A stretch of 64,000 bases of DNA, from positions 124,001 to 188,000 of IMG/VR virus record IMGVR_UViG_3300020154_000003; one strand, 5' to 3'. How positions within the stretch are numbered: the first letter of the stretch is position 1; each line of letters starts with the position of its first letter. The notes below the pieces were generated by a model. It was not told the origin of the DNA. It ran no database searches and saw only the letters and a list, made by a program, of their open reading frames with translations. Both the position numbers and the translations under genes were made by a program. Shown piece after piece: positions 1,487 through 54,694 of this stretch.

Positions 1487-1493
1487 CTTAAAA

Positions 1494-1573: not shown

Positions 1574-1585
1574 CTTTAAAAAAAT

Positions 1586-1658: not shown

Positions 1659-1677
1659 CTCAATAAAATAAAAAGTT

Positions 1678-8068: not shown

Positions 8069-8138
8069 AACAGCTATTTTCAGCGTTTTTTAAACATTTC
8101 ACTTACTTTTTCGTATAATATTGTATTAAAGTATACAT

Positions 8139-34277: not shown

Positions 34278-34562
34278 TTACTTTACCATTGCTTTGAGTT
34301 CAGCCTTAACTCTTTTTGCAACCTCCCCGCGCCAAGTGCTGGCATTGCTAAGGAAGTAGAGCACGATACTTTTTGCGTCATCCGCACCATACATATCGTT
34401 CACTGAGTTGAGCGTTCCCATTGCTTGCAGATAAGGAACAGCACCAAAGTTAACGTTTTTCCAGTCACTGCGGATTTCGCGGGCGATTTCAGATAGACTT
34501 CTTTTGCGAGTCAAATCTTTGTTCAGAAGAGTTCCGTTTGTTGTCATGATGATAAGTGCCAT
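34278..34562 (-). CDS. conserved phage hypothetical protein
   Basis: RSLSEIAREIRSDW...PYL.AM...YFLSNASTWRG. Confidence 0.7.
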   Translation of the reverse strand: MALIIMTTNGTLLNKDLTRKRSLSEIAREIRSDWKNVNFGAVPYLQAMGTLNSVNDMYGADDAKSIVLYFLSNASTWRGEVAKRVKAELKAMVK

Positions 34563-34970
34563 TTTGTTTCGTTGTTTATACTAAGTTAAACGGGAATTCT
34601 TAATTAAGGTTACAGTATATCCGCTTTTTCTTTGTAGCATTTTTCAGCATACTGAATTGCCTCAAAGTCATCGTTGGCCACAACCAGCCCATGAGTTTCC
34701 CCGAAACTTGTTAGCCAAAAGTATAAGGTTGCCTTTACCTTTCCAACCAGACAAGGGTAAATTCCTGCTTCAGTTGGCACAGGTTCAGCGATACTGAAAA
34801 TATCGTATCCGTTTTCACTCTCCAATTTGCCGTGCAGGTAAGTGAAAGGAATGCGTTTGGAAGGGAAGTCGAAACGTTGCTTTCCTAAAACTGATTCGGG
34901 GTTGATCCTAAGTGTTTCCATATCTCATTAAACGTCAAATAGTTAATTAAGGTTACACAAAAGTAATAAA

Positions 34971-34993
34971 AAAAAGGGACTTTTTTAAGTCCC
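34971..34993 (-). terminator. intrinsic terminator; GGGAC/GTCCC family also near 38363, 38825, 39171 and 40581
   Basis: Hairpin adjacent to an A run on the + strand (U tail on the - strand). Confidence 0.7.
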
Positions 34994-34999
34994 GTATTT

Positions 35000-35884
35000 T
35001 TATGCTGCTTCAACCGTTTCGGTTTCTTTGGTCAACTTTTTGTCGAACAGTTGCAGGATGTTCGCATAGATTTTATTGTCGGCTTCCATGCGTAACTTTT
35101 GCGAAAGGTCTGCTTCACAATTTTCCAAGATAAAGTTCATGGAATTGTAAAGTATCCAAAGGTTCAAGTCACATTCAAACACGTCCATTTCATACTCAAT
35201 CCGTTGAATCGTTTCGTCAATCGACTTGAGCGGGAAGTGAGTTCCTTTGACAAGGTTGCGAATTAATTTTTCAATTTTCGCAGACGTTGGCTTTTCAATG
35301 GTCACGGCTTTCATAAGGTTGATCTGATTTTCAACCGTCTCAAAATTCGTGATATAGTTATCAATGTGGGTTGAAACCTCTTCCATTGAATAAATCGCTG
35401 AGTTGCTATGTTTGAATTCATACACGAAAGAAAGACCTTTCAGGTACGTTGAGAACGTTACAGATACACGTCCCTTTTCGTCAACCATATAGCGAACCAG
35501 CCCACCGATTGCTTGTGCTTTGATTTTTCCATCGTAAGAATTCACGAAAGAAACGGCAGGCAGAATGATTTCAGATTTCGGGCTGACAGTCGGGATAGTC
35601 GGAGTAACGTTCACGAAAAATTGTGCATCTTTCGTTGACTTTACGCGAGTCTCAAAACCTTTGAATTTCTTTTCCAGTACTGGCATAAGAGGTTCGAGCA
35701 CGGCACTGTTTTCAACCAGCTTGTAAACGTCTGAACAAAAGTTCAGGGCTTTTTTACGTTTACCGATACGACCAACAATGGCGTAAGCGTTTTCGCTATT
35801 CACTTCCATTGTCGCATCTTTGAAGAGTTCCACAGTCGCCTCTTTTGTGACAGGGAAACAGATAGCTTTAATTTCGGGATGCAT
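35000..35884 (-). CDS. DUF932-like protein
   Basis: CSDVYKLVEN...NSYDG...F.H...NLW.LYN. Confidence 0.6.
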   Translation of the reverse strand: MHPEIKAICFPVTKEATVELFKDATMEVNSENAYAIVGRIGKRKKALNFCSDVYKLVENSAVLEPLMPVLEKKFKGFETRVKSTKDAQFFVNVTPTIPTVSPKSEIILPAVSFVNSYDGKIKAQAIGGLVRYMVDEKGRVSVTFSTYLKGLSFVYEFKHSNSAIYSMEEVSTHIDNYITNFETVENQINLMKAVTIEKPTSAKIEKLIRNLVKGTHFPLKSIDETIQRIEYEMDVFECDLNLWILYNSMNFILENCEADLSQKLRMEADNKIYANILQLFDKKLTKETETVEAA

Positions 35885-36471
35885 ATTTTTGGTTGTTTGT
35901 TATATCCTATTATACGTACTTAATTCAGAAAGGTTGCCTTAATTTAGAATATTTTTCTTAATTCCCTGCTAGGTACTGGCACGTATCCGGTGAATTCATA
36001 AACCTCCACTATCCTGCCAGCCGTATTGTATTTGACAAATAGCGACCTGTTTTGAGTGTATTCCCTTTTAATGAGTTCAAACACTTTTACGACTGCTAAT
36101 TGAGCACGGACTAAAGTATAGTCGGGATTGCCTAAAATATCGTTGACAGTTTTCATATTAGAATACATAACAGTTCAGTTCATACTTTACTTTCATGCCA
36201 TAGACTTGAACGGCAAGGGCTTTCTTTGACTCTTTGCCATCTTTCAGAAGGGCAATTATATAGCGATTAGTTATTCCCTCAGAAGGTCTTTTTGGCCCTA
36301 CTGTGACCTTATTAAACCAGTCCGTTTCGTCAATGGTGAAACCTTTGGAGGTTGCAACGCGAACGGCCTCTGCCATTGCTGAGGTAAAAGAGTCGTGATA
36401 TAGTTGAAAGTTCATGTGAGTATTAACGTAGTTAATTAAGAAAGGTTGCACTAAATTAAGAAAAAAGCCCG

Positions 36472-36798
36472 TTAATTTACGGGCTGTTCATTTGCAATGC
36501 GAGTCAATTGCTTTGCGTATTTCATGATTTTCTTTTTGGCCATTGCCAGTTGCTTTGCAGTCATGAAACCCTTTTCAATATACCACTTTGCAAATTTAGT
36601 CATGATAAACGCATCCGTACCGTTGAAACCTACTCCATTGTTGTGAGCAGTCGAATCGGAATTCTTTTCGTCTTCCGTTTGACGTTCATAGATTTTCACT
36701 ACCGAACGCATAACAAATTTGTCATCGTTTTCGAGCAGCAATTTGATTTGTTCAACTTGCCAGACTCTTTTTTTGGTTGCTATGATCGTTGTTTCCAT
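36472..36798 (-). CDS. conserved phage hypothetical protein
   Basis: IYERQTEDEK...HNNGVGF..D...KYAKQL. Confidence 0.7.
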   Translation of the reverse strand: METTIIATKKRVWQVEQIKLLLENDDKFVMRSVVKIYERQTEDEKNSDSTAHNNGVGFNGTDAFIMTKFAKWYIEKGFMTAKQLAMAKKKIMKYAKQLTRIANEQPVN

Positions 36799-37311
36799 AC
36801 TGAGTTAAACGGACTTAATTAAGAAAGGTTGCGTTAATTAAGAAATATTTTTCCAGTACTGGTAAAAAAAATAAAAAGTAGGTTGGAGTACACTCTCTCG
36901 AAAACATTGACGTTTTCCACCCATCTTAACATATTGCAGGTTCGATAAGTATATTAACGGCAATACTTAATTAAGGTTGCGTAAAAGCTAAATTATTTTC
37001 GAATTATTTTGGAGGTCTGACAGACCAGTTCAGTTCCCCGTTGTGGATGTAGTAACCAAACTGTTTAAATTTATCCGGGCTGTTCAGTGTAACCCTGATA
37101 ATAAAATCATGTTTCTCCTTTTCGCTCCATTGTTGTGGCATTGTTTGGCTTTCCCTATGTTCCGGGAAGTCGCACCAAAGATTTACAAGGGTATGCATAA
37201 AATGGTCAGTGCTTACCACAAAGTTTGCAAAAGTTAAAATGTGTGCTTTCATATACTGAGTTAAACGGGTAAACTTAATTAAGGTTACATAAAAAGAAAA
37301 AAATCCCTGAT

Positions 37312-38181
37312 TTATTCAGGGACTGACATATAAACGTCTTCCATTATACTATGAGTGTAACCACGTCTAAGGGTATAATTTGGTACTTCATTCTTACCGA
37401 TTAGCACGGCTTTCCAAGTGATATTCCCCTCTGAATCTTTGTAAAGTTTCACGTCCATACCGTCAAAATAATTTGCAAGTTCTTGAGCGGGATTGTTAGT
37501 ACAAAACTCTTCAAAGAATGCGTAAAAGTCACAAAGGGTATTTCTGTTTTCCAAAGTATCGGGAATCATTTTTGCAGCCATACGGTAACCGTATCTATGG
37601 AGGTCAGCAATTTTGCGGAAACTCACAGACTTTTTATAATCTTCCCCGTATTGTCTTTCATCTTCATAGTTAGTATCGGGTGAAAATTGTTTCACCTTAT
37701 TCCAGTACTCAGATATTTGATCTTCCAAGTCATAGTCATTTGTCGGACGTTGTTTCGGTACGTTGCTTTCCAGCGTTGAACCAAACTGAGTATTCCCGCA
37801 TTCAATAGATTCTTGAATCATGTCTTGAGTCGTTAACCTCATTAGTTCAGCATTTGAATAGCGATAGTTACGACCTTGCAGCCTATTCCATACTCCGAGC
37901 GTATTGATATAATACCACATTGCGCCCATTGCAGCCATTTCGCCCCCTACATTCATTGCATAGTCCCCGCGAAAGTATTTGTTTGAATATTCATGACTAT
38001 GTTCAAACACGTCATGAAAAATTCCAGTACCACCCCAAAATGCATTGAATGACGAACCTGAATGGTTATTGTCATAGGTATCTTTGTGCGCTAAACCATA
38101 TTCACCAGTTGCATCGTCACAAAAGAACGTCAATTCGACTTTTTTAACTAACCGTTTCATATTCTTTGTTGTTGTGTTCAT
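37312..38181 (-). CDS. hypothetical protein, possible HD/HExxH-like metal site
   Basis: FHDVFEH...GGEMAAMGA. Confidence 0.7.
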   Translation of the reverse strand: MNTTTKNMKRLVKKVELTFFCDDATGEYGLAHKDTYDNNHSGSSFNAFWGGTGIFHDVFEHSHEYSNKYFRGDYAMNVGGEMAAMGAMWYYINTLGVWNRLQGRNYRYSNAELMRLTTQDMIQESIECGNTQFGSTLESNVPKQRPTNDYDLEDQISEYWNKVKQFSPDTNYEDERQYGEDYKKSVSFRKIADLHRYGYRMAAKMIPDTLENRNTLCDFYAFFEEFCTNNPAQELANYFDGMDVKLYKDSEGNITWKAVLIGKNEVPNYTLRRGYTHSIMEDVYMSVPE

Positions 38182-39188
38182 GAGTATATTAACGGACTTA
38201 ATTAAGAAAGGTTGCCTTAATTAAGATTTTTTTTGAATTATTTCACCAGTACTGGTAAAAAAAAGAGGGCGTGTTGGAGTATACTCGGTGCCGTTTTTAA
38301 GAAACGTTACAAGTATATTAACGGGCAAACCTTAATTAAGGTTACACAAAAGATGAAAAAAAGAGGGACTTTTTTTGTCCCTCCCTTTCGTGTTAACTGA
38401 TTGCACTTTCCGGGCATCCCTCTGCTTTCATTGCCATTTCCTTGGCAGCTTTCAGGGATTGAGCGGTGACCTTTAAAACCTTTGTCCCGTTGTCATGTTT
38501 CAATCTGAGTGCAAAGGTTGTCATTCTTAAGTGTCGAGGCAATTTCATGCGTTTTGTGGGTTACGTAAAAGATTCATTTCGATAACTTTTTCACGGCATT
38601 GTCTACAGCTAGGCAAACTTAATGCCTGCCCCATAAATGTGGGAACCAGATTCAAACTACCTTTACCACCGTTCCATAGTCCTTTCCCGCAAAGGGTAGA
38701 GCCGTGCTGGAATTGTGTCAATCCTTCCCGACTTGCGGGCATGTGAGTAAGATCGTTTAAGTTCGTTGTCATATGTATACTAACGGGCATCCTTAATTAA
38801 GGTTACACAAAAAGGATAAAAAAAAGGGACTTTTTTTCAAGTCCCCTAATTTTCAGGCTGTTAGCAGATGTGCCACTTTGAACTTTGTCACCGTGTCGTT
38901 GAAGTCGTCAGCGAGGTTGTTTTCCTCATAGGTACGTTTCAGTTCTGCCAGTACCTTGAGATTCGATGCACCTTTGGGCAGTCCCACCAGTCTCTTAAAT
39001 TGAGCCTTTACAGGGGCAGCATTTCTGGCGATAGGCATTCCGAATTTAATTTCGGTAATGATCGACATAAGGAGGACTTTTAGAGTGAATGAATTCATAT
39101 TGTTTTTTGTTTTGTTATATGAGTTATAACGGCATTCCTTAATTAAGGTTACACAAAACGAGAAAAAAAAGGGACTTTTTTCAGTCCC

Positions 39189-39551
39189 TTAAATTTTGAT
39201 CGCTTTGTTGGTTACATGTGGCTTATTCCATTTCCCTATGTGGATGTTATAGTAATAATTCGGGATATTACCATAGTCGCCATCGGTTGAAACCGTTCTG
39301 CTTTTTGCGCTGATTATTTCAGCGATTGACAAAAGGAATTCAAGATAAGGCTTTCCCGCATGATGTTCTTTTATGTACATCGGGATAGGATTGAGTTGCA
39401 TGTAATTTTCGGGAAACTCAAAAGGGCTTTCCATTACCGCGACCTCAATGGTCGAAAGGTGTTGGCGTGTTATGCTAAATTTCACATTCGGATATTTAGC
39501 TTTGATCTTTGCCCTCATTTCCTGAACGGTCTCGGTTGTGATATAACTCAT
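39189..39551 (-). CDS. LPD29-like protein
   Basis: R.KIK.KYP.VKFSI...H...YY.NIHIGKWNKP. Confidence 0.55.
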   Translation of the reverse strand: MSYITTETVQEMRAKIKAKYPNVKFSITRQHLSTIEVAVMESPFEFPENYMQLNPIPMYIKEHHAGKPYLEFLLSIAEIISAKSRTVSTDGDYGNIPNYYYNIHIGKWNKPHVTNKAIKI

Positions 39552-39729
39552 AACTTTAACGGTTATAAAGTGAAAGTAAGTAAAAACTGGTTAACACCAA
39601 AAAAACGAAGATGTTTATTATTATGCGTTTCATGAGTATATTAACGGGCAAACGTTAATTAAGGTTACAAAAAAAAATATTTTATTTTTTCGTGAATAAT
39701 GTAACCTTTGTGAATAGTTCACGTTAATA

Positions 39730-39813
39730 TACATACGAACGCTGACAAGCTAGTAGGAGAGCCGAAAAGAAGGAAAAGGAGAGAACGGTTTCTGCAGCCA
39801 TCCGTTCTTTTTT
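39730..39813 (+). ncRNA. candidate small RNA copy 1
   Basis: Promoter at 39701-39727, no ORF, terminal hairpin GAACGG/CCGTTC plus T run. Confidence 0.55.
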
Positions 39814-41091
39814 AAAAAAAAGAGAAACAAAAAAAGGGGATTATTCTCCCCTTGCTTCTTTGTCAAGTTGTTCTTTCAGGTCTTGTTCGTGCTGTTTTTC
39901 AGCCTCGATGTCCAAAAGTTCCTCAACTTGCTGCTCGATAATAAAATCCGGGATTTCGTCTTCCATTGCTTTTTATTTAAGTTGTGGGTATCTCCATAGA
40001 GTATCTTTCACCGTGCGGTTGTTAACTATGACTTTCGTTTCATCCATGATGCAGGAAAGTTCACAGTTCCCGAAGTAGGATGTTTGAGCGTTTTTCTTTG
40101 CTTGTTTCAAAGAATTGCCCCAACCTTCCCGGACTGAATAACCTGATTGTTTCAGGCCATTTTTTTCGCAAAGTACCCTTTCCATTGCATCAGCTAAAAA
40201 GAATTCGACCAATAGAAAGTAGCAGGCGTTTCGTGTTGTTGTGTGTCTCATGAGTATATTAACGGGGATTGTTAATTAAGGTTGCGTGAAAAGAAAAAAT
40301 ATTTTTTGTAACCTTTGTTGCATTGTTCCCGTTAACAATGCCAAACAACGAAAAACTATGAAATTTTATGGCTATGTTCCCACAAAAGAGGGGAAAGAAC
40401 CTTTAGGGACTGAAGGGCGCACAATGTTTGAACTTGAAACAGTTCCGGGCGCAATTCGAAAGATGAGACGGTATGCCAGTACTGTGAATTCTCCTAAACT
40501 TTCCGCTCCATCATTTAAGCTATTCAGCTATTCTAATTTTTACGATCAATCAACTTTTACTGAAATTATTTAAAAGGAAAGGGACTATTTTTTAGTCCTT
40601 TTTAGTCCCTTTTTTTGCCTTTACCCTTGCGTAATTTCCGCTACTCTTATAGTATGTTCCCACATACGTTAGGCCATTCACTGCCTTTATTGTGACTGCC
40701 TGTCGCTTGTCACCAAAGTTTGATCGCCATTCCCTGCCAAGTACCACTACTCCTAATTTGTCGCCTGTCCAAGTTGTGGCGTATGTCATCGGAGTTCCTT
40801 CAGTGATATACAGGAAATAATTCTCAGGCTTATCGTGCATGAATTCGTAGCACTCAACCAGACTGCGAAGATCGTTTGTAACAATGTCCGCATGAGGGAA
40901 TGTCGCACAGATTTCAGCAGGGATGCCATTGGTCTTGTGCAATGTACGGTACTCTAAAGATGCTGCATCGTATTCAGCGATTTTCATCTTGTAGATTGCG
41001 TAATGTTCAGCGTTCATATCGTGTTTGTTTTGTTGTTAAGTATATTAACGGACAATGTACGTAAAGGTTACATAAAATGTTATATTATTTT

Positions 41092-41196
41092 AGGACAATG
41101 TTCACCGTGCCAGTACTGGTATAGGACAATGTACGTGCTGGTTAATTAAGGATAGGACAATGTACGCTGGCAGGGCATGAGGGAAGGACAATGTAC
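41092..41196 (+). repeat. four AGGACAATGT(A/T)C repeats at an exact 31-bp period
   Basis: GG starts at 41093, 41124, 41155 and 41186; a fifth copy at 41050. Confidence 0.85.
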
Positions 41197-41259
41197 ATAA
41201 AATAAAAAAAGGGGGTTAACAACTCCCCCTTTTGAACACAAAACAACAAAACAACAATG

Positions 41260-41898: not shown

Positions 41899-42632
41899 TT
41901 TCTTTAGTTGTTTGTTGTTACTACGTTTAACGGAAACAGTTTGAAAAGGTTACATTATTCTTCAGTTATTTGCCCCAAAAGTTCAACCAAGTCAGCAGCC
42001 GTGAATAAATTTCTTCCAGTACCTTCCAGATCATAGCTGGAATTGTATGCAAAATCATCTTCTTCAGCATCTTCAAAATCCATGTTCCCTTCATTTTCAG
42101 TTGCCAGTACCTCCACAATTCCCTTATCGCTTACCCATGCACCAACGATTGACACGTTCTCATCTTTCTCAGCAGCGAAGGGATTATCAATCAGGATTTT
42201 CCCTAATTGTTTTACCTGCTTTATAATAGCTTCGCGGGCCTGATCTTCAATCCCCTGAAGTTGTTCGAGTAATACTATTGATAGCTTATCCATCGGATTA
42301 AAGATTTTTGTCTGAAACAATTTTTTGTGCTTCTTTGAGACTCATTTTCGGTTGCTCATCTTCCCCTGAGAGGTTGAATGCTTCTTCTTCAGTCACAATT
42401 GCTTTTTGTACTGCCGTATCCTGAATGTGGTCAATGAGATTGATGATTCCTTCCAGCGTATCCCATTCAGGTTTGGTGATTGTCTTCTTTGCCTGAAGGT
42501 TAACCAGTACTGATTTTTGTGCTTTCAGTAGGGTGAAGTCCAGTTTCATTAGAACTTCGAATGCGGGTGCTGTTGCCATTTTCTTTTGTTGTTTGTTTTG
42601 TATGTATACTAACGGCTGCTATCCGCAAAAGG

Positions 42633-43331
42633 TTACGCATTCACAAAAGATTTTACGGATTTGTTGTATTGTTTGAATTCTAAATTAAACTTGTCGAATT
42701 CTTTAACGTTCAAACCTCCGAGACCATTTGTGAATAAGTCCACATCTTTCACATAGAAAGATTTGTGTTTGAAATACCACACAACAAAATCGTATGCTTC
42801 TTTCAAAGTAGGGAAACTCATTCCAGCGTACCCACCGATTCCCATTCTGCCAGCTTCGAAACTGAATTGTATGGTTCTGTTCGGGTTCTGCCAGACTTCA
42901 TAAAAGGTTTTTTCCTTTGGAAGTCTTTCCCTACTCCATACGGGTTCGAAAGTTCCCGTTATGGTGAGGTTGTATTTTTTAATTAAGATGCTCTTTCTGA
43001 ATTCAGGGTATTTCATCCCTACTTCACAACGTTGGTTGCCTTTCATGTATTGTTCTGCGAACTCAATTGCAATGCCCAACATAATCGTATCGTGCATACG
43101 CGACCAATTCCAGCTACTAGCCAATTCATTTTCGCATTGAGGCGTTTCAGGAATGCCGTGAACGGCAGCGTGAGCGTATTTGTGAGGGATGCCTGCGAAT
43201 TCCAAAATTTCAATTGCAGCTTCATTCGCTCCGGGAATTTCAATGTATCTTTCCCGGTTTTTGATGGTGGAGAAAGTGATGCCCAACTTTTTGCATACTT
43301 CGAGCACCTTGTTTGTTAATTCCGTTTTCAT
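42633..43331 (-). CDS. hypothetical protein
   Basis: 232-aa ORF with its own promoter. Confidence 0.7.
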   Translation of the reverse strand: MKTELTNKVLEVCKKLGITFSTIKNRERYIEIPGANEAAIEILEFAGIPHKYAHAAVHGIPETPQCENELASSWNWSRMHDTIMLGIAIEFAEQYMKGNQRCEVGMKYPEFRKSILIKKYNLTITGTFEPVWSRERLPKEKTFYEVWQNPNRTIQFSFEAGRMGIGGYAGMSFPTLKEAYDFVVWYFKHKSFYVKDVDLFTNGLGGLNVKEFDKFNLEFKQYNKSVKSFVNA

Positions 43332-46300: not shown

Positions 46301-47178
46301 CAACCAGATCAACTTTCCCGGAAGGAGTGCTGATACCTGCTGAGGGAGCGACAACCACTTTCACATTTGTGGGAGTAAGGATGTCACCTACACTTAAATC
46401 TTTTACCAGTTTTTTCACGGCTCAATTGTTTTCTGATTTCTGAAAATAAACAAACTCTTTTATTTCATCCTCGAAGTCACGTTTCACGTCATGAAAGTTA
46501 GGATATTTGCAAGCATAGTATGCTTGAACTTCCTTTTGCTTTTCCTCGGATGAGGCACGATACCATTCCTTTGCATCACTCCAAGATATTGTTTCTGTTT
46601 CCATACCCATATAAACGAAAAAAAGTACTGTAGGGTTACAGTACTTTTCACATTTTTCAAACTTTTTTTAATCTTCGACTGTTACGTCATCCAGTTTCAG
46701 GAAGTCATAGGCATCGGAACCACGTTGGTGTGCTGCTTTTTCTGACCTTTCCTCTAAGCCTTGTATTTGAGCAATTATCCTTGGATACCCGAAACGAGGT
46801 ACGGTAATGTGACCGAACGCTCTACCTTCATCCACAAAGGCATCCGCATAGATGATTCCCTTTTCAGAACCGATCATATAATACTTGATATTCGGGCTGC
46901 TGAAATGGAGTTTCAGTTTTACCGTTTTGCCATTGACAATGCCTGACACTGAAAGATCATCATGGTCAATCAGTACCCGTATATCAATGCCAGTTGCAAT
47001 TGTTGCCAGTACTGACAGAATGAGGGCGATGTCATGCTTTTGATGTGATTGAACAATTTCCATAGTTTTTTGTTGTTTGGTGATATGAGTATAAACGGCA
47101 CTATTCACAAAAGGTTGCCAGAAATTTAAAATATATTTTCTTGAATATTGTAACCTTTTCAAACGGCATCCGTTAATA

Positions 47179-47260
47179 TACATACGAACGCTAACAAAGC
47201 AAGTAGGAGAGGGGAAACCAACCAAATTAGAGGACGGTTATTGCAGGGGTCTGTCTGTTT
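47179..47260 (+). ncRNA. candidate small RNA copy 2
   Basis: Promoter at 47150-47176; ATACGAA..AGTAGGAGAG..ACGGTTATTGCAGGGGTCTGTC. Confidence 0.55.
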
Positions 47261-47284
47261 ACTATTGATGGCAAATATAGGAGG

Positions 47285-47845: not shown

Positions 47846-48282
47846 GGTTCGTTTTGTGTTTGGTTATATGTATTATACGGCTGCTTCAATAAAAGGTTGC
47901 GATAATATAGGGTTATTTTTCAATTAATCCATATATCCATGCTCAATTGAAAAGTCACTTTCCTTTGCACCCTCATTCTCAATTAAGTGTGCCTTAACGC
48001 GATCAAAGTAGGCGTAGTTAGTCATATTACCCTGAACAATTCCCTCAGTAATTGTCCTTCCATTTTGTCTTAAGCGCATACCGATGCAGCAAGTTCCTTG
48101 GTCACCCATTTCAGATATGACCTCCTTTGCGATTTGTTTCAGTGTTATTGCGTCCATGTTTTTTTGTGTTTGTTAATATAGAGTTAAACGGCCATGCCCG
48201 CAAAAGGTTGCGTAATTAAGGATAAAAAAAGTTAAATTATTTTCACAAATAATGTAACCTTTGTGAATAGTTCCCGTTAATA

Positions 48283-48356
48283 TACATACGAATCAAGTAG
48301 GAGAGCCGAAAAAAAGGAAATTAGAAAACGGTTATTGCAGGGGTCTGTCTTGTTTA
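48283..48356 (+). ncRNA. candidate small RNA copy 3
   Basis: Promoter at 48254-48280; same conserved blocks as copies 1 and 2. Confidence 0.55.
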
Positions 48357-48474
48357 ACTTATGCCAGTACTGGAAAAAATATTTAAACTATTTTCGTGAA
48401 AAACGTAACCTTTGTACAAAAGTCAACGTATAAAGAGCATACGCAAACAACAAACAAAACAAACTTTACTAGCT

Positions 48475-49278: not shown

Positions 49279-50601
49279 ATAGTACTGGCATGAAAACTAC
49301 AAACCTACTCAGAAAATACAATAGGCTTGAGGACAATAACGATCACAATGAAGCTGCTGCCTTGCTGGTTAATAACTTTGGTACGGATGACGAAAAGCAA
49401 ACCATGAAGGAAATTATTGCCCGTGCTGAAAAACAAAACGGCATGACCAGTGAGGATATAAAATTGAGGTATGAAATATCTCAAAAGTACTATCCGATAA
49501 TCACAGGCAAAGCCTATCCAATACAAAAGAAGTAACCCGGACAATGTTCACCCTTAATTAATAAAGCTATGGACACTCAAAAAATTGATAACCTTATCCA
49601 TCAATTGGATAGTATTGCACGAAGTTACGATGGCTATGAGTATGGCCTGCCTACTCATCATGACCATACGATGATTGAAATGGAGAATGCTATTAAACAT
49701 GCTTTCCCGGACAATGTACAGACCAGTACTGACAAGTCAGAAAAGATGCGGGCGGTATTGGAAAAATTGGTAGCTTCGTTCCCGGAAATGGATACCGATG
49801 AACCAATAGCTGGCAGCGATGCCGTTGACATCCTTTGCGGGATGTGGGATGAAATTAAAGACGCTATAAAATAACCTCCTATGAAAAATCCGATTATCAT
49901 AATTAAGGTTGGTAAAACTGTAATTGGAGATACTAGGGATTCACGTACAACTAATGATGCTAAGAGAAAATTTCTCAAGCAATACTCAGGGTACAATCCT
50001 AAATCAGTTACTGCGACTATTAAATATAACTAATATGGCAAAGAAAAATAAAATTGTCATCACTGACAATAAGGAAATGATAGCAGAGTTCATGAACTTA
50101 ATTAACAAACCCATCTACGAAAAGAAGTCCCCGATGTTCTTTAAGGATGAGGGAGGTTATTACGTAACCAAACTGACTGCCAGTAATGAGCCTGCTGACC
50201 CTAACAAAATGTATGAATTCGGTACGCTCACAGAGGTGCCAGTACCAAATAAAAGGACTGCCATCCAATACGCAAAACAATTCGGTCGCACTGCAATATT
50301 TGGTTAGAATAATGTAACCTTTACGTACAATGTACGTTAGATAACATATGAACAAACGCATCTTAGAATTCGCAAAGCTTCCCTTGGAGGAAAGAATCAA
50401 AGTGATCATGCTCTTCGGAGTATCCCTGATGACTATCCCTCATTGTGGCCTGATTGGTTCACTCTTTACCCTTGGCACTGAGTACGTTGAAATGATGGCT
50501 GATACCCGTACTGGTGAGATAGTTCACCTTGGCATCGCGGATTACAGCGACCTGAATAAGTACGCTGCTCACATCGACCTCGATATTTAATAAACTGTAC
50601 A

Positions 50602-51267
50602 ATGTACGTCAAGTATAACGATTTCAAAGATCATTGTGGATTACTGCCTGACTGGTACTCTGAAGAGATACATGATCAAATAAACAAATACCTGCCTGAA
50701 AGTAAGCTGCAGGCCGTTAAGTATCTGAAGGACACCTCCAAAGAATTCGAGACTGAAACCACGCATGGCTTAGGGCTGAAGGAATGTAAAGACATCGTTG
50801 ACTCGATGGCCACAGTACTGGCAAAGCTTGAGTCTATTCGAGAGGCATATGATCATGAACTTTCTTCATTTATTGAGCATTCATTAATTAAGAATACCAA
50901 TACCGCCCTGTCTCTAAAAGAATTCAAACAAAAAGCAAAAATCATTCTCCCAAACTGGTATACTGAATCTTTCCATCAAAAGGTCGTTAACCTGATGGTC
51001 AATGAACAGAAACTCAATGCCTGCAAATTGATCTGCGATACCTCATCCAGCTATGGAACCCGCCACATCTATGATCTGAAGTGGGCAAAGATTGAAATCG
51101 TTGACGTACTCAACGATATGATGAGCAAAATCAATAAAGATGAACTGTCTGGCAAAATTATATCCTTAATTGAGGATGGAGCCTTCCGCACCAGTATTTT
51201 AAAAGAAGTACTGGAATTCGTCCCAAAAGCGGAAATGCTTAAAATAGTTGAAAAATATTCACCATAA
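50602..51267 (+). CDS. protein with two ribosomal L7/L12 C-terminal-like repeats
   Basis: KLQAVKYLKD...GLGLKECKDIVD and KLNACKLICD...DLKWAK; each unit preceded by LPxWYxExxH. Confidence 0.55.
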   Translation: MYVKYNDFKDHCGLLPDWYSEEIHDQINKYLPESKLQAVKYLKDTSKEFETETTHGLGLKECKDIVDSMATVLAKLESIREAYDHELSSFIEHSLIKNTNTALSLKEFKQKAKIILPNWYTESFHQKVVNLMVNEQKLNACKLICDTSSSYGTRHIYDLKWAKIEIVDVLNDMMSKINKDELSGKIISLIEDGAFRTSILKEVLEFVPKAEMLKIVEKYSP

Positions 51268-51355
51268 TTCGAAACAATTTTCTTAACTTTCGCAACCTTT
51301 ACGTACAATGTACGTTAGTATACATAAAAGAAAATAACTTTAACTAACCACTCTT

Positions 51356-51919
51356 ATGAAATCCAGCAAAGTTGTCATCCTTGAGATCAATGCAATTTAC
51401 AAAGCTTTCAAGCCTGCGATCACGAAGTACGTGAATCTCAAGATCAGGGATAAGATGATTGCTGAAGAACTCATCAATGACGTGTTCGTTAAAGTTCACA
51501 CATCTCTCCGCACCTACGATTCGAAGAAAGCACAATTTAATACTTGGATATTCAACATCGCCAAGAATGTGCTGATCGACCACTTCAGAAAGAAGTCGCT
51601 CGAAACCACCTCTCTGGAAGTTTCCAAACAGGATGACTCTGAAGACACAATGTCTGAGACTCTGCCCGTGGCTACCCCGGATCGGAACCCCCTTGAATCC
51701 ATGATCAGCGATGAAACAATGTACAATGTACAAACCGCTATGGGCCACCTCAATGAGACTCAACGTGAAATGCTCACAATGTACGCTCTGGATAACCTGA
51801 CCTACGAAGAGATCGCAGCCATGCTCAACATGCCTATGGGTACTGTCAAAGGCACGATCTTTAACGCTCGTACCAGACTGAAAGAAATCCTTGGCAACCG
51901 TATACCAGTACTGGCATGA
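51356..51919 (+). CDS. ECF-type RNA polymerase sigma factor
   Basis: Region 2 AEELINDVFVKV...FNTWIFNIAKNVLIDHFRK; region 4 LTYEEIAAMLNMPMGTVKGTIFNARTRLK. Confidence 0.93.
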   Translation: MKSSKVVILEINAIYKAFKPAITKYVNLKIRDKMIAEELINDVFVKVHTSLRTYDSKKAQFNTWIFNIAKNVLIDHFRKKSLETTSLEVSKQDDSEDTMSETLPVATPDRNPLESMISDETMYNVQTAMGHLNETQREMLTMYALDNLTYEEIAAMLNMPMGTVKGTIFNARTRLKEILGNRIPVLA

Positions 51920-54694
51920 ATAATATAGCACAACCTGAAGACATGTTGAAGTGTAGCGATTGTAAGACAATCTACGATCCTCTGCTCAACAAAAGATGTC
52001 CCTGCTGTGGGAATAACCAGCGATTTCTTAATAGCGTTATTGAAGGGCTGGATGATGAGTCCAACTTCATTGGCGAGGATGATGACCATTAATTAAGGAA
52101 ACCATGTTACAAGCATTCTTAGCACAAACCGCACAAGATTACGATCTGCCAGTACATATCGTGCAACAGATTTGGGAGAAGTATGAAGGTACTGGATTGT
52201 TTTACGATAAATTGGAAGAATATCTCAAAAGTCGTAACCTTTGTAACTAGTTCTCGTTAACATACTCATATGGACTCACCCAAAGAAATTGTAGTAAGCG
52301 TCAAGACGAAACACACCTACAAGGTAGGGGAAGACCGTCTGGAACTCGACACACCTCTGACTGTCGATATGAAGAAATATAAAAAGACAGGGGAAAATAA
52401 CCACTTCATCTTCTATACCAGAAAGTCTTCCAAATGAATAAGCATCTCATCAACACGGGAACCCCGAAGTCAGCCCAACAAGCTTATAACAAACTTGCAA
52501 GCTTTCTTCATAAGAATTCTCAAGGGATCAATGATCCTGACACAGCCTTCCTGAAGCACCAGAAAGTATTATCAGTACTGGTTGGGAGGTACACGCCCGC
52601 TATCGATATGATGATCAGGGTCTGGTATAACGTGGAAGACTTCGTGGCTGATGGCGAACCTATGGATCAGGTATGGGCTGACATCGAAGACATGTGCAAT
52701 TAAACCAGTACTGGATATGAATAAGAAAGATATAAAAGTAGCTTGCTGGCTCAAGAATGGTACTGAATGGTATTATCCGGTAAAGACTATCGACTTGAGC
52801 GAATACGATCACGTTCAACTCCTAATCAAGGATGACCATTCAGGTGACATTTACATTGCTTGGAATGGTGATTCTGATGCTCAGAAACATGCCACAGGTA
52901 GACTCTTCAAATCAAAATAAACCAGTACTGGTATGACATCATTATCCGAACAACAACTCAATGACGTTTTGGAACATCTCAAAGAAAAACTTGAGGTAAA
53001 AGTCAAGACCAAAAGAGACGAAGGTTATCTCGCAGTAAGGGTTGAACTCTATTTGGATGGCGAAGTCATCGCTGCTGATGAGGACTCAGCCAGAGTGGAT
53101 TACTAAATTAAGGATCGGACAATGTACAAGACACCCACAATAGTCGAACAATTGGATCGAATAGGAGAGGATATATTGCGAGTACTGGCCGAAGAGAAGA
53201 CCCCTATGACTGTCTTTCAACTACACGTCTTGAGAGATAAGGAAAAATGCGATCTCTCATCCTATGGCTGGTCATTCGCCCTCGATAGACTCGAAAGAAA
53301 ACATCTGGTAGAATTCGTATCACCATGCCACTGGCAACTCAAAGATCAATCCCGCACAATGTACATAAGAGAACTCGAAGATTTATTGGATAAAAGAATA
53401 ACCCCCGACTAATGAAATATTTCAGGATCACCAGCAAAAAAACCAGTACTGGTGAAGTTCACTATTACATCGAAGCAAAAAGGAAATGGTATCACTTCTG
53501 GAAACTGCAGGGTGTATATGCAACCCATAAGATCGCTGCAGGAGTACTGGAGAAGCTGCTGGCTCAACCCCTTAATTAAGTAAACTGTACAATGTACGAT
53601 GAATAAGAACGTCAAAATCTATAAGCGAGACGAAATCCAAAAGGTCTATCATCAACACGCTTACCATTGTGGTTCCGTGCTCTATTCCAATGATGGCTAT
53701 ACGTGGCAGTCAGTACCGATGGATTCCGGGAAATGGGATATTCACAAATGGTCATTCGCCTTCATTGAACGGCCAAAAACCAGTACCGTGACATCGCTGC
53801 AGAGATTCCAGAATTATGTCTATAAGAATATCTGTGGGGCATATACCCCGGAGAAGCGACTGAAATCAATCGAAACATTGTACAGTAAAATTAATGGAAA
53901 TTGATCCTGAATTCATGAACAAGTTAATACTTTTGACGTATAATTGATCACATATGAACTCTCCAATCATTTCAGTTAAACCAGTACGAGGCAGCAAAGG
54001 AAAGCTTGAAGTCTTCCCCCAACACCTCTTCGTAAAGAATTGGGTCTTCAATGAAGACGAAAAGGATGAGGCAGCACTCGCCCATTACATCGCTGCAGTA
54101 GCTGAAAAGAATGGTATGTCAGCAAATGAAGTATACCAAATATTCCCTGCCATGCTCCGTATGCTCAGAAGCAATATCGATTGGGCTAACCCCAATAAGA
54201 TCACTCAAGCTGATCTCGATAAGGCAAATGAAAAAGGAATGATGTCCAAATAAACCAGTACTGGATAATGACAACAACCATCGAGAAACTCAGAGACCTG
54301 ACCGTGGAGCAACTACTCATCCTGTCAAACGAACTTTGTCAAACGACAGTACCTGAAGACGCTCTTATCCGGGAAGTGATCAAAGATACCCAACTAGACA
54401 CACTAACTCCGGGTCTGGCTTTCATTGGCTTGGCAGGCCATCTACATGTGGAAATGGCTGAACGTCTTAAACTCTTGACCAGTACTGGACAAATATCTTC
54501 CCCGGATGATACCTTAGAAAGATTGAACCCGAAAGGAAAAATGATCCTCTAATCAGTAATTATGAATATGGAATTCCGATTCGTCCTCATGGTGCCTTGC
54601 CCTAATTGCCATATCCAAATAAGCTGCATGGCCAGTACTTGCACCCATTGCAAAACCAAAGTGAGCAATCACAATTAAAAACCAGTACTGGACA

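What the first reader, a model, noticed from the sequence alone, without database searches (positions are those of the whole stretch)
34278..52434. Phage ECF sigma with its probable regulon: cassette-like genes, each with its own promoter
Seen: nearly every ORF is preceded by G(T/C)AACCTT-N13-CGT, often with TTAATTAA in the spacer, and the sigma gene has the same motif (51292-51318). The -35 GTAACC often supplies the upstream gene's TAA stop (34610, 42633, 44067, 44709, 45720). Four divergent promoter pairs occur (about 39.7, 40.3, 47.1 and 48.2 kb). Established: AAC/CGT is the classic ECF promoter signature, and ECF genes are commonly autoregulated. Inference: an early/host-takeover region whose repeated promoters could also act as recombination joints for gene shuffling.
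Basis: partly seen in the sequence, partly recalled or inferred. Interest (0 to 1): 0.65.

Follow-up and report, generated by a model that had tools for sequence, protein, structure and literature searches.

The report
Phage ECF-sigma promoter cassette block
An 18-kb stretch of a 366-kb soil phage holds about 45 small genes, most behind their own copy of one ECF-type promoter that also precedes a phage sigma-factor gene in the same stretch, and these promoter copies mark where related phages have gained, lost or swapped genes.

Summary
GYAACCTT-N13-CGT occurs 27 times in the window (0.05 expected), all between 34.6 and 52.3 kb. Six N14 variants bring the block to 33 sites, every one pointing at a downstream gene or non-coding element.

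The window lies in a complete 366-kb T4-related (gp20/gp23) soil jumbo phage. No RNA polymerase gene was detected, and the host is probably Bacteroidota.

- **Promoter type.** The motif is ECF-type (AAC-N16-CGT). The 187-aa protein at 51356-51919 is a true ECF-type sigma.
- **Conservation.** Its gene carries the motif in the window and in five relatives with 88-38% identical sigma. In the most distant contig only the -35 half is kept. In two complete relatives the motif cluster sits around the sigma gene at different genome positions.
- **Cassettes.** Seven promoters follow an intrinsic terminator, as in T4 PeSL cassettes.
- **Recombination.** One 232-aa gene is missing in a relative through a crossover inside two promoter copies.

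Not shown: which factor reads the promoters. The phage has a second, more conserved ECF sigma and a second AAC-N16-CGT promoter class. No host-type promoter feeds the sigma gene, no RNA data exist, and the "early" timing is unsupported.

Verdict: a new variant of two known kinds, PeSL cassettes and phage sigma regulons.

The parts
34278..52437 (.). Hyperplastic accessory-gene block: about 45 small, mostly ORFan genes on two arms diverging at about 48.2 kb, carrying 33 class-1 promoters
   Evidence: Pfam/PHROG hits only for sigma, GP88, DUF932 and LPD29
51356..51919 (+). sigma1: 187-aa ECF-type sigma factor (regions 2 and 4 only)
   Evidence: Pfam r2 48.5 bits, r4_2 52.9 bits; TIGR02937 94.6 bits against cut-off 42.9; phrog_1740
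51292..51315 (+). Class-1 promoter of the sigma1 gene (ATG 40 nt after CGT); the spacer holds a 7+1+7 palindrome overlapping the -10
   Evidence: -35 conserved upstream of sigma1 orthologues with 88, 59 and 51% identity
48475..49278 (+). GP88-family gene (PF17338), first gene of the '+' arm; lies upstream of sigma1 on every relative contig examined for gene order
   Evidence: ATG 48475 lies behind promoter 48405, whereas the deposited call starts at TTG 48412 inside the promoter
48405..48429 (+). N14 class-1 promoter of GP88 with a class-2-like -10 (CGTATAAA); possible entry point of a cascade
   Evidence: same hybrid form in L004 and L007
34590..34613 (-). Class-1 promoter -> 34278-34562 (94 aa); its TAA closes 34610-34921
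34932..34956 (-). N14 class-1 promoter -> 34610-34921 (103 aa), ATG 10 nt after CGT; terminator just upstream
35914..35937 (-). Class-1 promoter (CGTATAAT -10) -> 35000-35884 (294 aa, DUF932)
36426..36449 (-). Class-1 promoter -> 36158-36415 (85 aa), ATG +10; terminator upstream
36809..36832 (-). Class-1 promoter -> 36472-36798 (108 aa), ATG +10
36957..36980 (-). Class-1 promoter -> 32-codon ORF 36834-36932
37265..37288 (-). Class-1 promoter -> 37004-37252 (82 aa), ATG +12; terminator upstream
38192..38215 (-). Class-1 promoter -> 37312-38181 (289 aa), ATG +10
38321..38345 (-). N14 class-1 promoter with no ORF of 30 aa or more before the next promoter; terminator upstream
38783..38806 (-). Class-1 promoter -> 38545-38772 (75 aa), ATG +10; terminator upstream
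39129..39152 (-). Class-1 promoter -> 38853-39098 (81 aa); terminator upstream
39644..39668 (-). N14 class-1 promoter -> towards 39189-39551 (120 aa, LPD29)
39701..39724 (+). Class-1 promoter -> non-coding element copy 1
40262..40285 (-). Class-1 promoter -> 39973-40251 (92 aa), ATG +10
40308..40332 (+). N14 class-1 promoter -> 40358-40573 (71 aa)
41048..41071 (-). Class-1 promoter -> 40592-41017 (141 aa); last of five phased GTACATTGTCC sites lies in its spacer
41930..41953 (-). Class-1 promoter -> 41260-41898 (212 aa)
42612..42636 (-). N14 class-1 promoter -> 42298-42579 (93 aa); lower copy of the direct repeat flanking the 232-aa cassette
42633..43331 (-). 232-aa gene cassette present here and absent in relative L004; bounded by two promoter copies
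43362..43385 (-). Class-1 promoter -> 42633-43331; upper copy of the flanking direct repeat
43696..43719 (-). Class-1 promoter -> 43359-43664 (101 aa)
44047..44070 (-). Class-1 promoter -> 43748-44017 (89 aa); its TAA closes 44067-44357
44689..44712 (-). Class-1 promoter -> 44357-44656 (99 aa); its TAA closes 44709-45035
45047..45070 (-). Class-1 promoter -> 44709-45035 (108 aa), ATG +11; terminator upstream
45700..45723 (-). Class-1 promoter -> 45309-45665 (118 aa); its TAA closes 45720-45929
47095..47118 (-). Class-1 promoter -> 46668-47063 (131 aa)
47150..47173 (+). Class-1 promoter -> non-coding element copy 2
47877..47900 (-). Class-1 promoter (CGTATAAT -10) -> 47285-47845 (186 aa)
48188..48211 (-). 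Class-1 promoter -> 47924-48157 (77 aa); this cassette is replaced in L004 and skipped in a contig of run X4
48254..48277 (+). Class-1 promoter -> non-coding element copy 3
50314..50337 (+). Class-1 promoter -> 50348-50590 (80 aa), ATG +10; palindromic spacer; the same 46-nt module precedes a different gene in L004
52234..52257 (+). Class-1 promoter -> 52270-52437 (55 aa); the segment 52097-52236 in front of it (holding the 48-aa gene 52104-52250) is replaced by 35 nt in runs X3-X5
34976..34993 (-). Intrinsic terminator (hairpin plus T-run) about 10 nt upstream of promoter 34956
36466..36485 (-). Intrinsic terminator upstream of promoter 36449
37302..37324 (-). Intrinsic terminator upstream of promoter 37288
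38357..38389 (-). Intrinsic terminator upstream of promoter 38345
38824..38847 (-). Intrinsic terminator upstream of promoter 38806
39169..39190 (-). Intrinsic terminator upstream of promoter 39152
45086..45108 (-). Intrinsic terminator upstream of promoter 45070
39729..39812 (+). Conserved non-coding element, copy 1 (candidate small RNA behind a class-1 promoter)
47178..47262 (+). Conserved non-coding element, copy 2
48282..48360 (+). Conserved non-coding element, copy 3
41050..41196 (-). Five copies of G(T/A)ACATTGTCC, the upstream four spaced 31 nt apart, running into promoter 41071: candidate operator array

Best explanation
Window 34.3-52.4 kb is the hyperplastic accessory-gene region of a T4-related, 366-kb soil jumbo phage. 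The phage has no detectable RNA polymerase of its own and most likely infects a Bacteroidota host.

About 45 small, mostly ORFan genes and three copies of a short non-coding element are organised as near-monocistronic cassettes. Each cassette starts with an ECF-type promoter: an AT-rich tract, G(T/C)AACCTT, 13-14 nt, then CGTT(A/T)A, which gives AAC-N16-CGT. Seven promoters also have an intrinsic terminator about 10 nt upstream.

Inferred mechanism: the phage ECF sigma encoded inside the block (sigma1, 51356-51919) binds host core RNA polymerase and reads these promoters, including its own, as positive feedback. Transcription would start at the conserved A 11 nt after CGT. In seven cassettes that A is the A of the ATG, which would give leaderless mRNAs.

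Because the roughly 30-60-nt promoter modules are repeated, they act as short homology patches. Homologous recombination between them deletes, inserts or swaps gene cassettes, as PeSL cassettes do in T4-type phages.

Shown: the motif, its statistics, its orientation and spacing relative to genes, the terminators, the sigma family, conservation and linkage in relatives, and a crossover inside promoter copies.

Inferred: The first molecules of sigma1 need another trigger, which is not identified.
For: **Motif statistics and placement**
- 27 exact sites against 0.05 expected, all within 18 kb of a 366-kb genome.
- With the N14 variants there are 33 sites. All are co-oriented with the downstream gene or element, with the ATG 10-12 nt or 24-45 nt after CGT in 28 of them.

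**Promoter architecture**
- AAC at -35 and CGT at -10 is the ECF signature, and ECF specificity is routinely inferred from the sigma gene's own promoter (PMC5758882).
- sigma1 has regions 2 and 4 only and passes TIGR02937.
- No phage RNA polymerase was detected, which fits gp23-type 'group 2' jumbo phages that rely on their own sigma factors (PMC7824862).
- Sigma-70-type sites are not enriched in the block (46 against 47.5 expected). Terminators are enriched (35 against 14.7, sd 3.4), and seven sit directly upstream of a promoter.

**Conservation and linkage**
- On contigs with sigma1 88, 59 and 51% identical, the motif array is present and the -35 upstream of the sigma gene is conserved, even at 27.6% GC.
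- Two complete relatives (371 and 362 kb, sigma1 38-39% identical) have 21 and 36 sites (reversed-pattern control 2 and 0). Of these, 20 and 26 are clustered around the sigma1 orthologue, with one site immediately upstream of it.
- The block sits at a different genome position in each phage, more than 100 kb from sigma2.
- A 60-kb fragment that carries only sigma2 has none.
- An unrelated contig with a 30%-identical sigma repeats the architecture: seven TGTAAC-N16-CGT sites.

**Recombination**
- L004's single promoter module joins the upstream flank of the window's 43.3-kb copy to the downstream flank of the 42.6-kb copy. The crossover lies in the shared 27-nt core, and the 232-aa gene is the segment between them.
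- Cassettes at 44.7-45.0, 47.9-48.15 and 49.9-50.3 kb are replaced, each with a conserved promoter at one or both ends.
- A 46-nt module that includes the ATG is 97.8% identical in front of different genes.
- Contigs from other soil samples skip 47873-48153 and replace 52097-52236.
Against: - No transcript data exist. All runs that hold the sequence are kept as contigs and are probably DNA.
- The phage has a second ECF sigma (sigma2) next to the primase gene. It is far more conserved in the clade, with 50 or more homologues at 46-75% identity, against fewer than 10 found for sigma1.
- The class-1 -35 is invariant although sigma1 has diverged to 38% identity. That would also fit a more conserved reader.
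- A second AAC-N16-CGT class with a CGTATAA -10 is dispersed over all three complete genomes. In one relative it shares the AACCTTT -35. The two classes may therefore overlap in recognition.
- No host-type promoter was found that could make sigma1 first, so pure autoregulation cannot start the block.
- No conserved anti-sigma gene follows sigma1.
- Synteny breakpoints fall at gene junctions in general. About two thirds of junctions carry a promoter, so breakpoint enrichment at promoters cannot be separated statistically from enrichment at gene boundaries (my count).
Confidence: 0.6

Rival explanations
1. Cascade or other reader. The class-1 promoters are real ECF-type promoters but are read by a different factor, either the phage's conserved second ECF sigma (sigma2, genome 300487-301059) or a host ECF sigma. 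On this view sigma1 is a product of the block. It then reads another class, for example the dispersed AAC-N16-CGTATAA promoters, or shares targets with sigma2 as paralogous ECF sigmas do in Bacillus subtilis.
For: - There are two ECF sigmas and two AAC-N16-CGT promoter classes.
- sigma2 is a core gene of the clade, and the class-1 -35 is invariant while sigma1 diverges to 38% identity.
- No host-type promoter precedes sigma1, so something else must fire first.
- The GP88 promoter upstream of sigma1 has a class-2-like -10 here and in L004 and L007.
- On contig L032 the sigma gene has a CGTT -10 while its downstream array has CGTA.
- Overlapping recognition among ECF paralogues, discriminated at the base after CGT, is documented (PMC5758882).
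Against: - The class-1 cluster travels with sigma1 and not with sigma2. It lies more than 100 kb from sigma2 in three genomes and at different positions.
- A sigma2-only fragment has no class-1 site.
- sigma2's own transcription unit shows no class-1 or class-2 site upstream.
- To my knowledge no phage is known to depend on a host ECF sigma, which is normally held inactive, for a whole gene block.
Confidence: 0.27
2. Host housekeeping sigma. The motif is the early promoter read by the host's primary sigma, exactly as PeSL promoters are in T4-type coliphages, and the phage sigmas act elsewhere.
For: - The block looks like a T4 hyperplastic early region: small ORFans, individual promoters and terminators (PMC2839356).
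- Early phage genes normally use the host primary sigma.
Against: - The conserved bases (AAC, CGT, N16) match neither sigma-70 (TTGACA/TATAAT; no enrichment) nor the Bacteroidota primary-sigma consensus (TTTG / TAnnTTTG, quoted from my own knowledge). The Bacteroidota-type pattern does occur elsewhere in this genome but not in the block in the right orientation.
- The motif is conserved across phages of 27.6-40.5% GC.
Confidence: 0.06
3. Not promoters. The repeats are mainly binding or recombination sites, for example for a recombinase, a homing system or a DNA-binding regulator, and their position in front of genes is secondary.
For: - Indels and replacements are bounded by the repeats.
- Several spacers hold palindromes (TTAATTAA, CCAGTACTGG, ACGTACA-A-TGTACGT) that look like protein-binding sites.
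Against: - All 33 sites are strictly co-oriented with the downstream gene.
- The distance to the ATG is fixed (10-12 or 24-45 nt).
- The layout is bipartite with a variable spacer, several sites lie just after a terminator, and the AAC/CGT spacing is that of ECF promoters.
- No recombinase or homing gene was detected in the block.
Confidence: 0.03

Closest known systems
PeSL (promoter-early stem-loop) cassettes of T4-type phage hyperplastic regions (PMC2839356; PMC4122927)
   Same: - The phage is T4-related (gp20 portal, gp23 capsid).
- The region is rich in small ORFans.
- Short composite terminator-plus-promoter modules are repeated in front of individual genes.
- Indels and replacements between close relatives end in the modules, consistent with homologous recombination between copies.
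   Different: - The promoter here is ECF-type (AAC-N16-CGT), not a strong sigma-70-like early promoter. It is probably read by a phage-encoded sigma whose gene lies in the same block.
- Only 7 of 33 modules carry the stem-loop.
- In the other half of the block the -35 overlaps the upstream stop codon.
- Mini-circles were not tested.
Phage-encoded sigma factors with their own promoter class: phiEco32 gp36 and Salmonella phage 7-11 gp47 (PMC8948821; PMC12276001)
   Same: - A phage sigma redirects host core RNA polymerase.
- 7-11 gp47 reads a bipartite GTAAtg-N16-aCTA promoter with starts 6-9 bp from the promoter element, a layout much like GYAACC..N..CGT.
   Different: - There the sigma gene is not itself read by the phage sigma: early promoters use host sigma-70, and gp36 of phiEco32 is a middle-gene product. 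The 6-8 sigma-dependent promoters serve middle or late genes.
- Here 33 or more promoters serve accessory ORFans, the sigma gene carries the same promoter, and no host-type promoter was found.
Autoregulated bacterial ECF sigma regulons, e.g. Bacillus subtilis sigmaW/X/M/V (PMC5758882)
   Same: - -35 AAC and -10 CGT with about 16-nt spacing.
- The sigma gene is preceded by its own promoter type.
- Paralogous sigmas have overlapping promoter classes, discriminated near the -10 and by spacer sequence.
   Different: - No anti-sigma partner was found.
- The regulon is a contiguous phage gene block, not dispersed stress genes.
- The promoters double as recombination patches.
gp23-type 'group 2' jumbo phages and T4 late transcription (PMC7824862)
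   Same: - Family B DNA polymerase, gp23-type capsid, no detectable RNA polymerase, phage-encoded sigma factors.
- A single-element AT-rich motif, (A)GTATTTAT(A), lies 13-18 nt before many structural genes, much like T4 late promoters.
   Different: - That review describes a minimal sigma and RpoD-like sigmas, with no promoter sets.
- Here two ECF-type sigmas come with two bipartite promoter classes.

Membership tests
ECF (group 4) sigma-70-family sigma factor (sigma1, 51356-51919) | Only regions 2 and 4 present; no region 1.1 or region 3; about 190 aa | tested here: met
   Pfam Sigma70_r2 at residues 15-81 and Sigma70_r4_2 at 125-175; no other sigma region hit; 187 aa
ECF (group 4) sigma-70-family sigma factor (sigma1, 51356-51919) | Scores above the curated cut-off of the ECF superfamily model | tested here: met
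   TIGR02937 94.6 bits against cut-off 42.9. No equivalog or subfamily model reaches its cut-off, so there is no assignment to a named ECF group
ECF (group 4) sigma-70-family sigma factor (sigma1, 51356-51919) | Co-transcribed cognate anti-sigma factor (typical, not universal) | tested here: not met
   The ORF overlapping the sigma stop (51916-52092) is not conserved in three relatives and hits no anti-sigma family
ECF (group 4) sigma-70-family sigma factor (sigma1, 51356-51919) | Binds core RNA polymerase and directs initiation | not testable with these tools
   Needs in vitro transcription
ECF-type promoter | -35 AAC and -10 CGT separated by about 16-17 nt | tested here: met
   AAC-N16-CGT in 27 sites and N17 in 6; both trinucleotides were fixed by the search pattern, and the flanks are conserved beyond it
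ECF-type promoter | Upstream of and co-oriented with genes, at a short regular distance | tested here: met
   33 of 33 co-oriented; ATG 10-12 nt or 24-45 nt after CGT in 28
ECF-type promoter | Present upstream of the sigma gene itself (autoregulation signature) | tested here: met
   51292-51315 in the window. L004 and L007 keep the full motif. In L006 the -35 is kept but the -10 reads AGT. G001 and G002 each have a site just upstream of the orthologue
ECF-type promoter | Transcription start a few nt downstream of the -10 | not testable with these tools
   No RNA run holds the sequence; only contigs could be laid
PeSL cassettes of T4-type phages | Host genome is a T4-type phage | tested here: met
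   Portal_T4 (gp20) E 3.6e-63 and Gp23 capsid E 1.4e-73
PeSL cassettes of T4-type phages | Composite of a stem-loop terminator and a promoter | tested here: inconclusive
   Met for 7 of 33 modules, with hairpin plus T-run about 10 nt before the -35. The other modules have no stem-loop
PeSL cassettes of T4-type phages | Promoter is a strong sigma-70-like early promoter | tested here: not met
   The motif is ECF-type; sigma-70-type sites are not enriched, 46 against 47.5 expected
PeSL cassettes of T4-type phages | Concentrated in a hyperplastic region of small non-conserved genes | tested here: met
   27 of the 31 exact genome copies lie in 18 kb, plus six N14 variants there. Most of the block proteins scanned have no family hit; the only hits are the sigma, GP88, DUF932 and LPD29
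PeSL cassettes of T4-type phages | Indels and replacements between close relatives are bounded by the modules | tested here: met
   Crossover inside two promoter copies around 42633-43331; three replaced cassettes with a conserved promoter at one or both ends; variants in other samples
PeSL cassettes of T4-type phages | Mini-circles formed by recombination between neighbouring modules | not tested
   Would need raw reads or PCR across predicted circle junctions
Phage sigma regulon of the phiEco32 / 7-11 type | The sigma gene is not read by the phage sigma itself (phiEco32 gp36 is a middle-gene product; early promoters use host sigma-70) | tested here: not met
   No sigma-70-type or Bacteroidota-type promoter upstream of sigma1 in the right orientation; the only promoter-like sites on that arm are class 1
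Phage sigma regulon of the phiEco32 / 7-11 type | Sigma-dependent promoters serve middle/late (replication, structural) genes | tested here: not met
   Class-1 targets are ORFans. Structural genes carry a different motif, GTATTTAT

The most novel reading that the evidence does not exclude
A self-contained, mobile 'sigma plus regulon' module. In a clade of roughly 360-kb soil jumbo phages the accessory-gene block carries its own ECF sigma, so any gene dropped behind a copy of the 30-60-nt promoter module is expressed at once, in some cases as a leaderless mRNA. The same module is also the homology patch that moves genes in and out. The switch would be gated by a DNA-binding factor that recognises the GTACA(A/T)TGTAC palindrome overlapping the -10 of the sigma gene's promoter. 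It would be fired first through the hybrid GP88 promoter by the clade's core ECF sigma.
Probability: 0.3. Interest if true: 0.72.

Novelty: new variant of a known kind. Interest (0 to 1): 0.58.

Why it matters
- It would extend the PeSL idea, in which regulatory cassettes both express and shuffle accessory genes, beyond coliphage-type sigma-70 promoters. The new case is a phage-owned ECF sigma/promoter pair in an uncultured soil jumbo-phage clade that probably infects Bacteroidota.
- It gives a concrete, testable promoter set for phage sigma factors. These factors are known to be common in gp23-type jumbo phages, but their targets are mostly unknown.
- It would offer a compact orthogonal sigma/promoter pair for hosts that lack standard expression tools: 33 natural variants here and more than 50 in relatives.
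- It points to a multi-sigma programme, with two ECF-type classes plus a T4-late-like class, that could be mapped by simple in vitro transcription.

Tried and rejected
- **DNA similarity to deposited phages:** none.
- **IMG/VR scans:** a promoter pattern gave only three single chance hits, and sigma1 peptide patterns gave no close relatives. Relatives came from the protein word search and from sigma2.
- **Rfam on 33-55 kb:** only one sub-threshold hit.
- **Fold of the non-coding element:** no better than shuffles, z between -1.0 and +0.8.
- **RNA evidence:** no run on record as RNA holds the stretch. The 'metatranscriptomic' runs are kept as contigs and are probably DNA, so no starts, ends or strand could be read. 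Several loose ends are only cross-matches of paralogous promoters within the same genome and were not counted as recombination evidence.
- **Stop-codon recoding**, suggested by a tRNA with a CTA anticodon: rejected, because reading TAG through does not lengthen the long ORFs.
- **Anti-sigma partner:** none found.
- **Sigma-70-type promoters in the block:** not enriched. Bacteroidota-type -7 motifs in the block are not in useful positions.
- **Distant bacterial homologues of sigma1:** only 6 of 78 have AAC-N16-CGT within 200 nt upstream, against 0 on the opposite strand. This is too weak to generalise.
- **Host naming:** attempted through the closest bacterial sigma homologues. The best hits are mixed Bacteroidota and Firmicutes MAGs at 36% identity or less, so no host is named.
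- **Breakpoint statistics:** breakpoints are at gene junctions, and about two thirds of junctions carry a promoter, so enrichment at promoters beyond gene boundaries cannot be claimed. The claim rests on the crossover anatomy.
- **Separating sigma1 from sigma2 by presence or absence:** failed, because both complete relatives carry both.

Full report
**1. What the window is**

The window is bases 124,001-188,000 of a single 366,038-bp contig with 36.3% GC. The contig is held as a virus record rated 100% complete and comes from a soil metagenome.

It encodes a T4-type portal (gp20) and a gp23-type major capsid protein. It also encodes a family B DNA polymerase and a large polyvalent protein, and tRNAs. 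No multisubunit or T7-like RNA polymerase domain was detected (the T7-type search had no positive control). This matches the 'group 2' gp23-type jumbo phages, which lack an RNA polymerase and carry their own sigma factors (PMC7824862).

Start codons are not preceded by a Shine-Dalgarno signal. TTTG-N17-21-TAnnTTTG sites, which I recognise from my own knowledge as the Bacteroidota primary-sigma promoter form, occur in 10 upstream regions against 1.6 expected. The closest bacterial homologues of the sigma are partly Bacteroidota. A Bacteroidota host is therefore likely but not shown.

**2. The observation**

GYAACCTT-N13-CGT occurs 27 times in the window against 0.05 expected, all between 34,590 and 52,257. 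Genome-wide there are 31 exact copies. The other four lie at 203.1-207.7 kb in front of further ORFans. Six sites with a 14-nt spacer raise the block to 33.

- A position count shows an AT-rich tract upstream, then G(T/C)AACCTT(T), a variable spacer and (C)CGTT(A/T)A. An A stands 11 nt after CGT in 28 of 31 sites. The real spacing is AAC-N16-CGT.
- All 33 sites point at the downstream gene. The ATG follows CGT by exactly 10 nt in seven cases and by 11-12 nt in three. It follows by 24-45 nt, through an A/C-rich leader, in eighteen.
- The five claimed cases in which TAA inside GTAACC ends the upstream gene are real, and so are the four divergent pairs.
- About 28 of roughly 45 genes have their own promoter, so 'nearly every ORF' is somewhat generous.

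**3.

- **Terminators.** Seven promoters (34956, 36449, 37288, 38345, 38806, 39152, 45070) lie about 10 nt behind a G+C hairpin with a T-run. Terminator-like sites are enriched in the block (35 against 14.7, sd 3.4), while sigma-70-type sites are not (46 against 47.5).
- **Two halves.** The 34.3-40.3-kb half has the TTAATTAA spacers and most of the terminators and +10 ATGs. The 41-48-kb half has few terminators, stop codons inside the -35 and 30-nt leaders.
- **Non-coding element.** Three '+' promoters (39701, 47150, 48254) are followed by a conserved non-coding element of about 80 nt, not by an ORF. It occurs only in this block, and twice at the matching places in relative L004. There it is 94-97% identical, against about 86% for the flanking coding DNA. 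Two base pairs covary, but the fold is not better than shuffles and Rfam has no match.
- **Spacer families.** Spacers fall into families: TTAATTAA, TGTGAATAGTTC, GCGGATAGCAGC and TACGTACAATGTAC.
- **Palindrome.** GTACA(A/T)TGT occurs 33 times in the genome, 27 of them in window 41-55.5 kb. Five copies run into promoter 41071, the upstream four spaced 31 nt apart. A perfect 7+1+7 palindrome overlaps the -10 of the sigma gene's promoter and of promoter 50314. The same motif, and CCAGTACTGG, fill promoter spacers in two distant relatives.

**4. The sigma factor**

The protein at 51356-51919 has sigma regions 2 and 4 only and passes the ECF superfamily model, TIGR02937 (94.6 bits against 42.9). 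It reaches no named subgroup. The small ORF overlapping its stop is not conserved, so no anti-sigma partner is evident.

The genome holds two more sigma-like genes:
- **sigma2** (genome 300487-301059) lies next to a primase gene and also passes TIGR02937. It is 27% identical to sigma1.
- **A 257-aa protein** (genome 31400-32173) has only weak region-2 similarity.

**5. Other promoter-like classes**

- **Class 2.** About 30 dispersed sites read AAC(A/T)nTT-N12-(A)CGTATAA(T), 2-42 nt before starts. They precede polynucleotide kinase, PRPP synthetase, HD, GHKL-ATPase and GmrSD-like genes.
- **Class 3.** The single element (A)GTATTTAT(A) lies mostly 13-18 nt before 49 genes, including the portal gene. 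None lies between 147.5 and 198.5 kb. It resembles T4 late promoters in layout (my own knowledge).

Both classes are enriched upstream of genes in two related complete genomes as well. In one of these, class 2 shares the AACCTTT -35 with class 1.

**6. Relatives**

sigma1 has few homologues. Contigs with 88% (L004, L005), 59% (L007) and 51% (L006, 27.6% GC) identical sigma keep the GP88-to-sigma gene order. All carry the same motif array. The -35 upstream of the sigma gene is conserved while the surrounding non-coding DNA has diverged.

sigma2 has 50 or more homologues at 46-75% identity on many large contigs, so it is a core gene of the clade. Through it I reached two complete relatives, G001 (371.5 kb) and G002 (362.6 kb).

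| Genome | sigma1 orthologue identity | Class-1 sites | Reversed-pattern control | Sites in the cluster | Cluster position |
|---|---|---|---|---|---|
| G001 | 38% | 21 | 2 | 20 | 254.5-268.1 kb |
| G002 | 39% | 36 | 0 | 26 | 10.1-27.6 kb |

In both genomes the cluster surrounds the sigma1 orthologue and one site lies immediately upstream of it. sigma2 lies more than 100 kb away, and the block sits at a different genome position in each phage. A 60-kb fragment with only sigma2 has no class-1 site. An unrelated 4.3-kb contig with a 30%-identical sigma shows seven TGTAAC-N16-CGT sites, including one before the sigma gene.

**7. Recombination**

Against L004 the block is collinear except for whole-cassette differences. 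The clearest case:
- The window has two promoter copies at 42.6 and 43.3 kb sharing a 27-nt core.
- L004 has one copy. Its upstream flank matches the 43.3-kb copy and its downstream flank matches the 42.6-kb copy.
- The 232-aa gene 42633-43331 is exactly the segment between them.

Further cases:
- Cassettes at 44.7-45.0, 47.9-48.15 and 49.9-50.3 kb are replaced by unrelated sequence, each with a conserved promoter at one or both ends.
- A 46-nt module that includes the ATG is 97.8% identical in front of different genes in the two phages.
- Contigs from other soil samples skip 47873-48153 and replace 52097-52236.

One caveat applies. Breakpoints lie at gene junctions generally, and about two thirds of junctions carry a promoter. 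The argument therefore rests on crossover anatomy and not on enrichment statistics.

**8. Mechanism and its limits**

The best-supported reading is a PeSL-like hyperplastic region (PMC2839356, PMC4122927) whose modules use an ECF-type promoter. AAC/CGT, autoregulation and discrimination near the -10 and in the spacer are established for bacterial ECF sigmas (PMC5758882). A phage sigma that reads a bipartite GTAAtg-N16-aCTA promoter is known in phage 7-11 (PMC8948821).

Several points count against it or remain open:
- sigma2 is better conserved than sigma1, yet the class-1 -35 never changes.
- The two classes are similar and may overlap in recognition.
- No host-type promoter can make sigma1 first.
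- The GP88 promoter upstream of sigma1 has a class-2-like -10 in three lineages. It could be the entry point of a cascade; this is an inference.

The label 'early' is therefore not supported. 'Accessory or host-takeover genes of unknown timing' is as far as the content goes: ORFans, DUF932 and LPD29.

**9. Verdict**

The feature is real, conserved across a clade, and a new variant of two known kinds. The missing decisive evidence is biochemical or transcriptomic.

Noticed in passing
window 39729-39812, 47178-47262, 48282-48360 (+): A conserved non-coding element of about 80 nt sits directly behind a class-1 promoter. All three genome copies are in this block. Two copies lie at matching places in relative L004 at 94-97% identity, higher than the flanking genes. 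Two base pairs covary (CC..GG against GG..CC). There is no Rfam match, and the fold is not better than shuffles. It is a candidate small RNA family.
   Followed up: partly
window 41050-41196 (-); also 50323-50337 and 51301-51315 (+): Five copies of G(T/A)ACATTGTCC, the upstream four spaced 31 nt apart, run into promoter 41071. A perfect palindrome ACGTACA-A-TGTACGT overlaps the -10 of the promoters of sigma1 and of 50348-50590. 27 of the genome's 33 GTACA(A/T)TGT sites lie in window 41-55.5 kb, and the motif also fills promoter spacers in relatives G001 and G002. This looks like an operator for an unidentified regulator.
   Followed up: partly
genome 300487-301059 (-), outside the window (L022:487-1059): A second ECF-type sigma (190 aa, TIGR02937 79 bits) lies next to a primase gene. 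It has 50 or more homologues at 46-75% identity on many contigs of 100-370 kb, so it is a core gene of this phage clade, unlike sigma1.
   Followed up: partly
window 33604-33629 (-), 62064-62089 (-), 8093-8118 (+), and about 25 more sites genome-wide: A second ECF-like promoter class, AAC(A/T)nTT-N12-(A)CGTATAA(T), lies 2-42 nt before starts of dispersed genes (polynucleotide kinase, PRPP synthetase, HD, GHKL ATPase, GmrSD-like). It is excluded from the class-1 block. Its -10 is conserved in two related genomes.
   Followed up: partly
genome-wide; in the window around 8875, 18052 and 23492 (+): The single-element motif (A)GTATTTAT(A) lies mostly 13-18 nt before 49 genes, including the portal gene. 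It has no -35 partner, is absent from 147.5-198.5 kb, and is equally enriched in two relatives. It is probably the late promoter class. A 257-aa protein with weak region-2 similarity (genome 31400-32173) may be its factor.
   Followed up: partly
window 1412-1659 (+): A tRNA cluster holds Ile(GAT), Ile(TAT) and a tRNA with anticodon CTA, called Pyl by ARAGORN, which would be an amber suppressor. Reading TAG through does not lengthen the long ORFs, so there is no sign of recoding.
   Followed up: yes
window 33954-34038 (-): tRNA-Arg(CCG) sits exactly at the left edge of the class-1 block, between the last class-1 cassette and the first class-2 promoter.
   Followed up: no
window 36853-36862, 38246-38255, 41110-41119, 45050-45059, 48367-48376, 51904-51913: The palindrome CCAGTACTGG recurs in intergenic spots, once inside a promoter spacer (45070). 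In relative G001 it is the commonest promoter spacer. Its function is unknown.
   Followed up: no
window 48412 against 48475 (+): The deposited gene call for the GP88-family gene starts at TTG 48412, inside promoter 48405-48429. ATG 48475, 45 nt after CGT, is the more likely start. Similarly 46668-47183 probably starts at ATG 47063, behind promoter 47118.
   Followed up: partly
genome 323214-327431 (-), outside the window (L023:3214-7431): A 1405-aa polyvalent protein combines an ADP-ribosyltransferase (ART-PolyVal), a 2'-5' RNA ligase-like domain and a CCA-adding/poly(A) polymerase head domain.
   Followed up: no
whole genome: No Shine-Dalgarno signal precedes start codons; the leaders are A-rich. 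TTTG-N17-21-TAnnTTTG sites occur in 10 upstream regions against 1.6 expected. Both point to a Bacteroidota host.
   Followed up: partly
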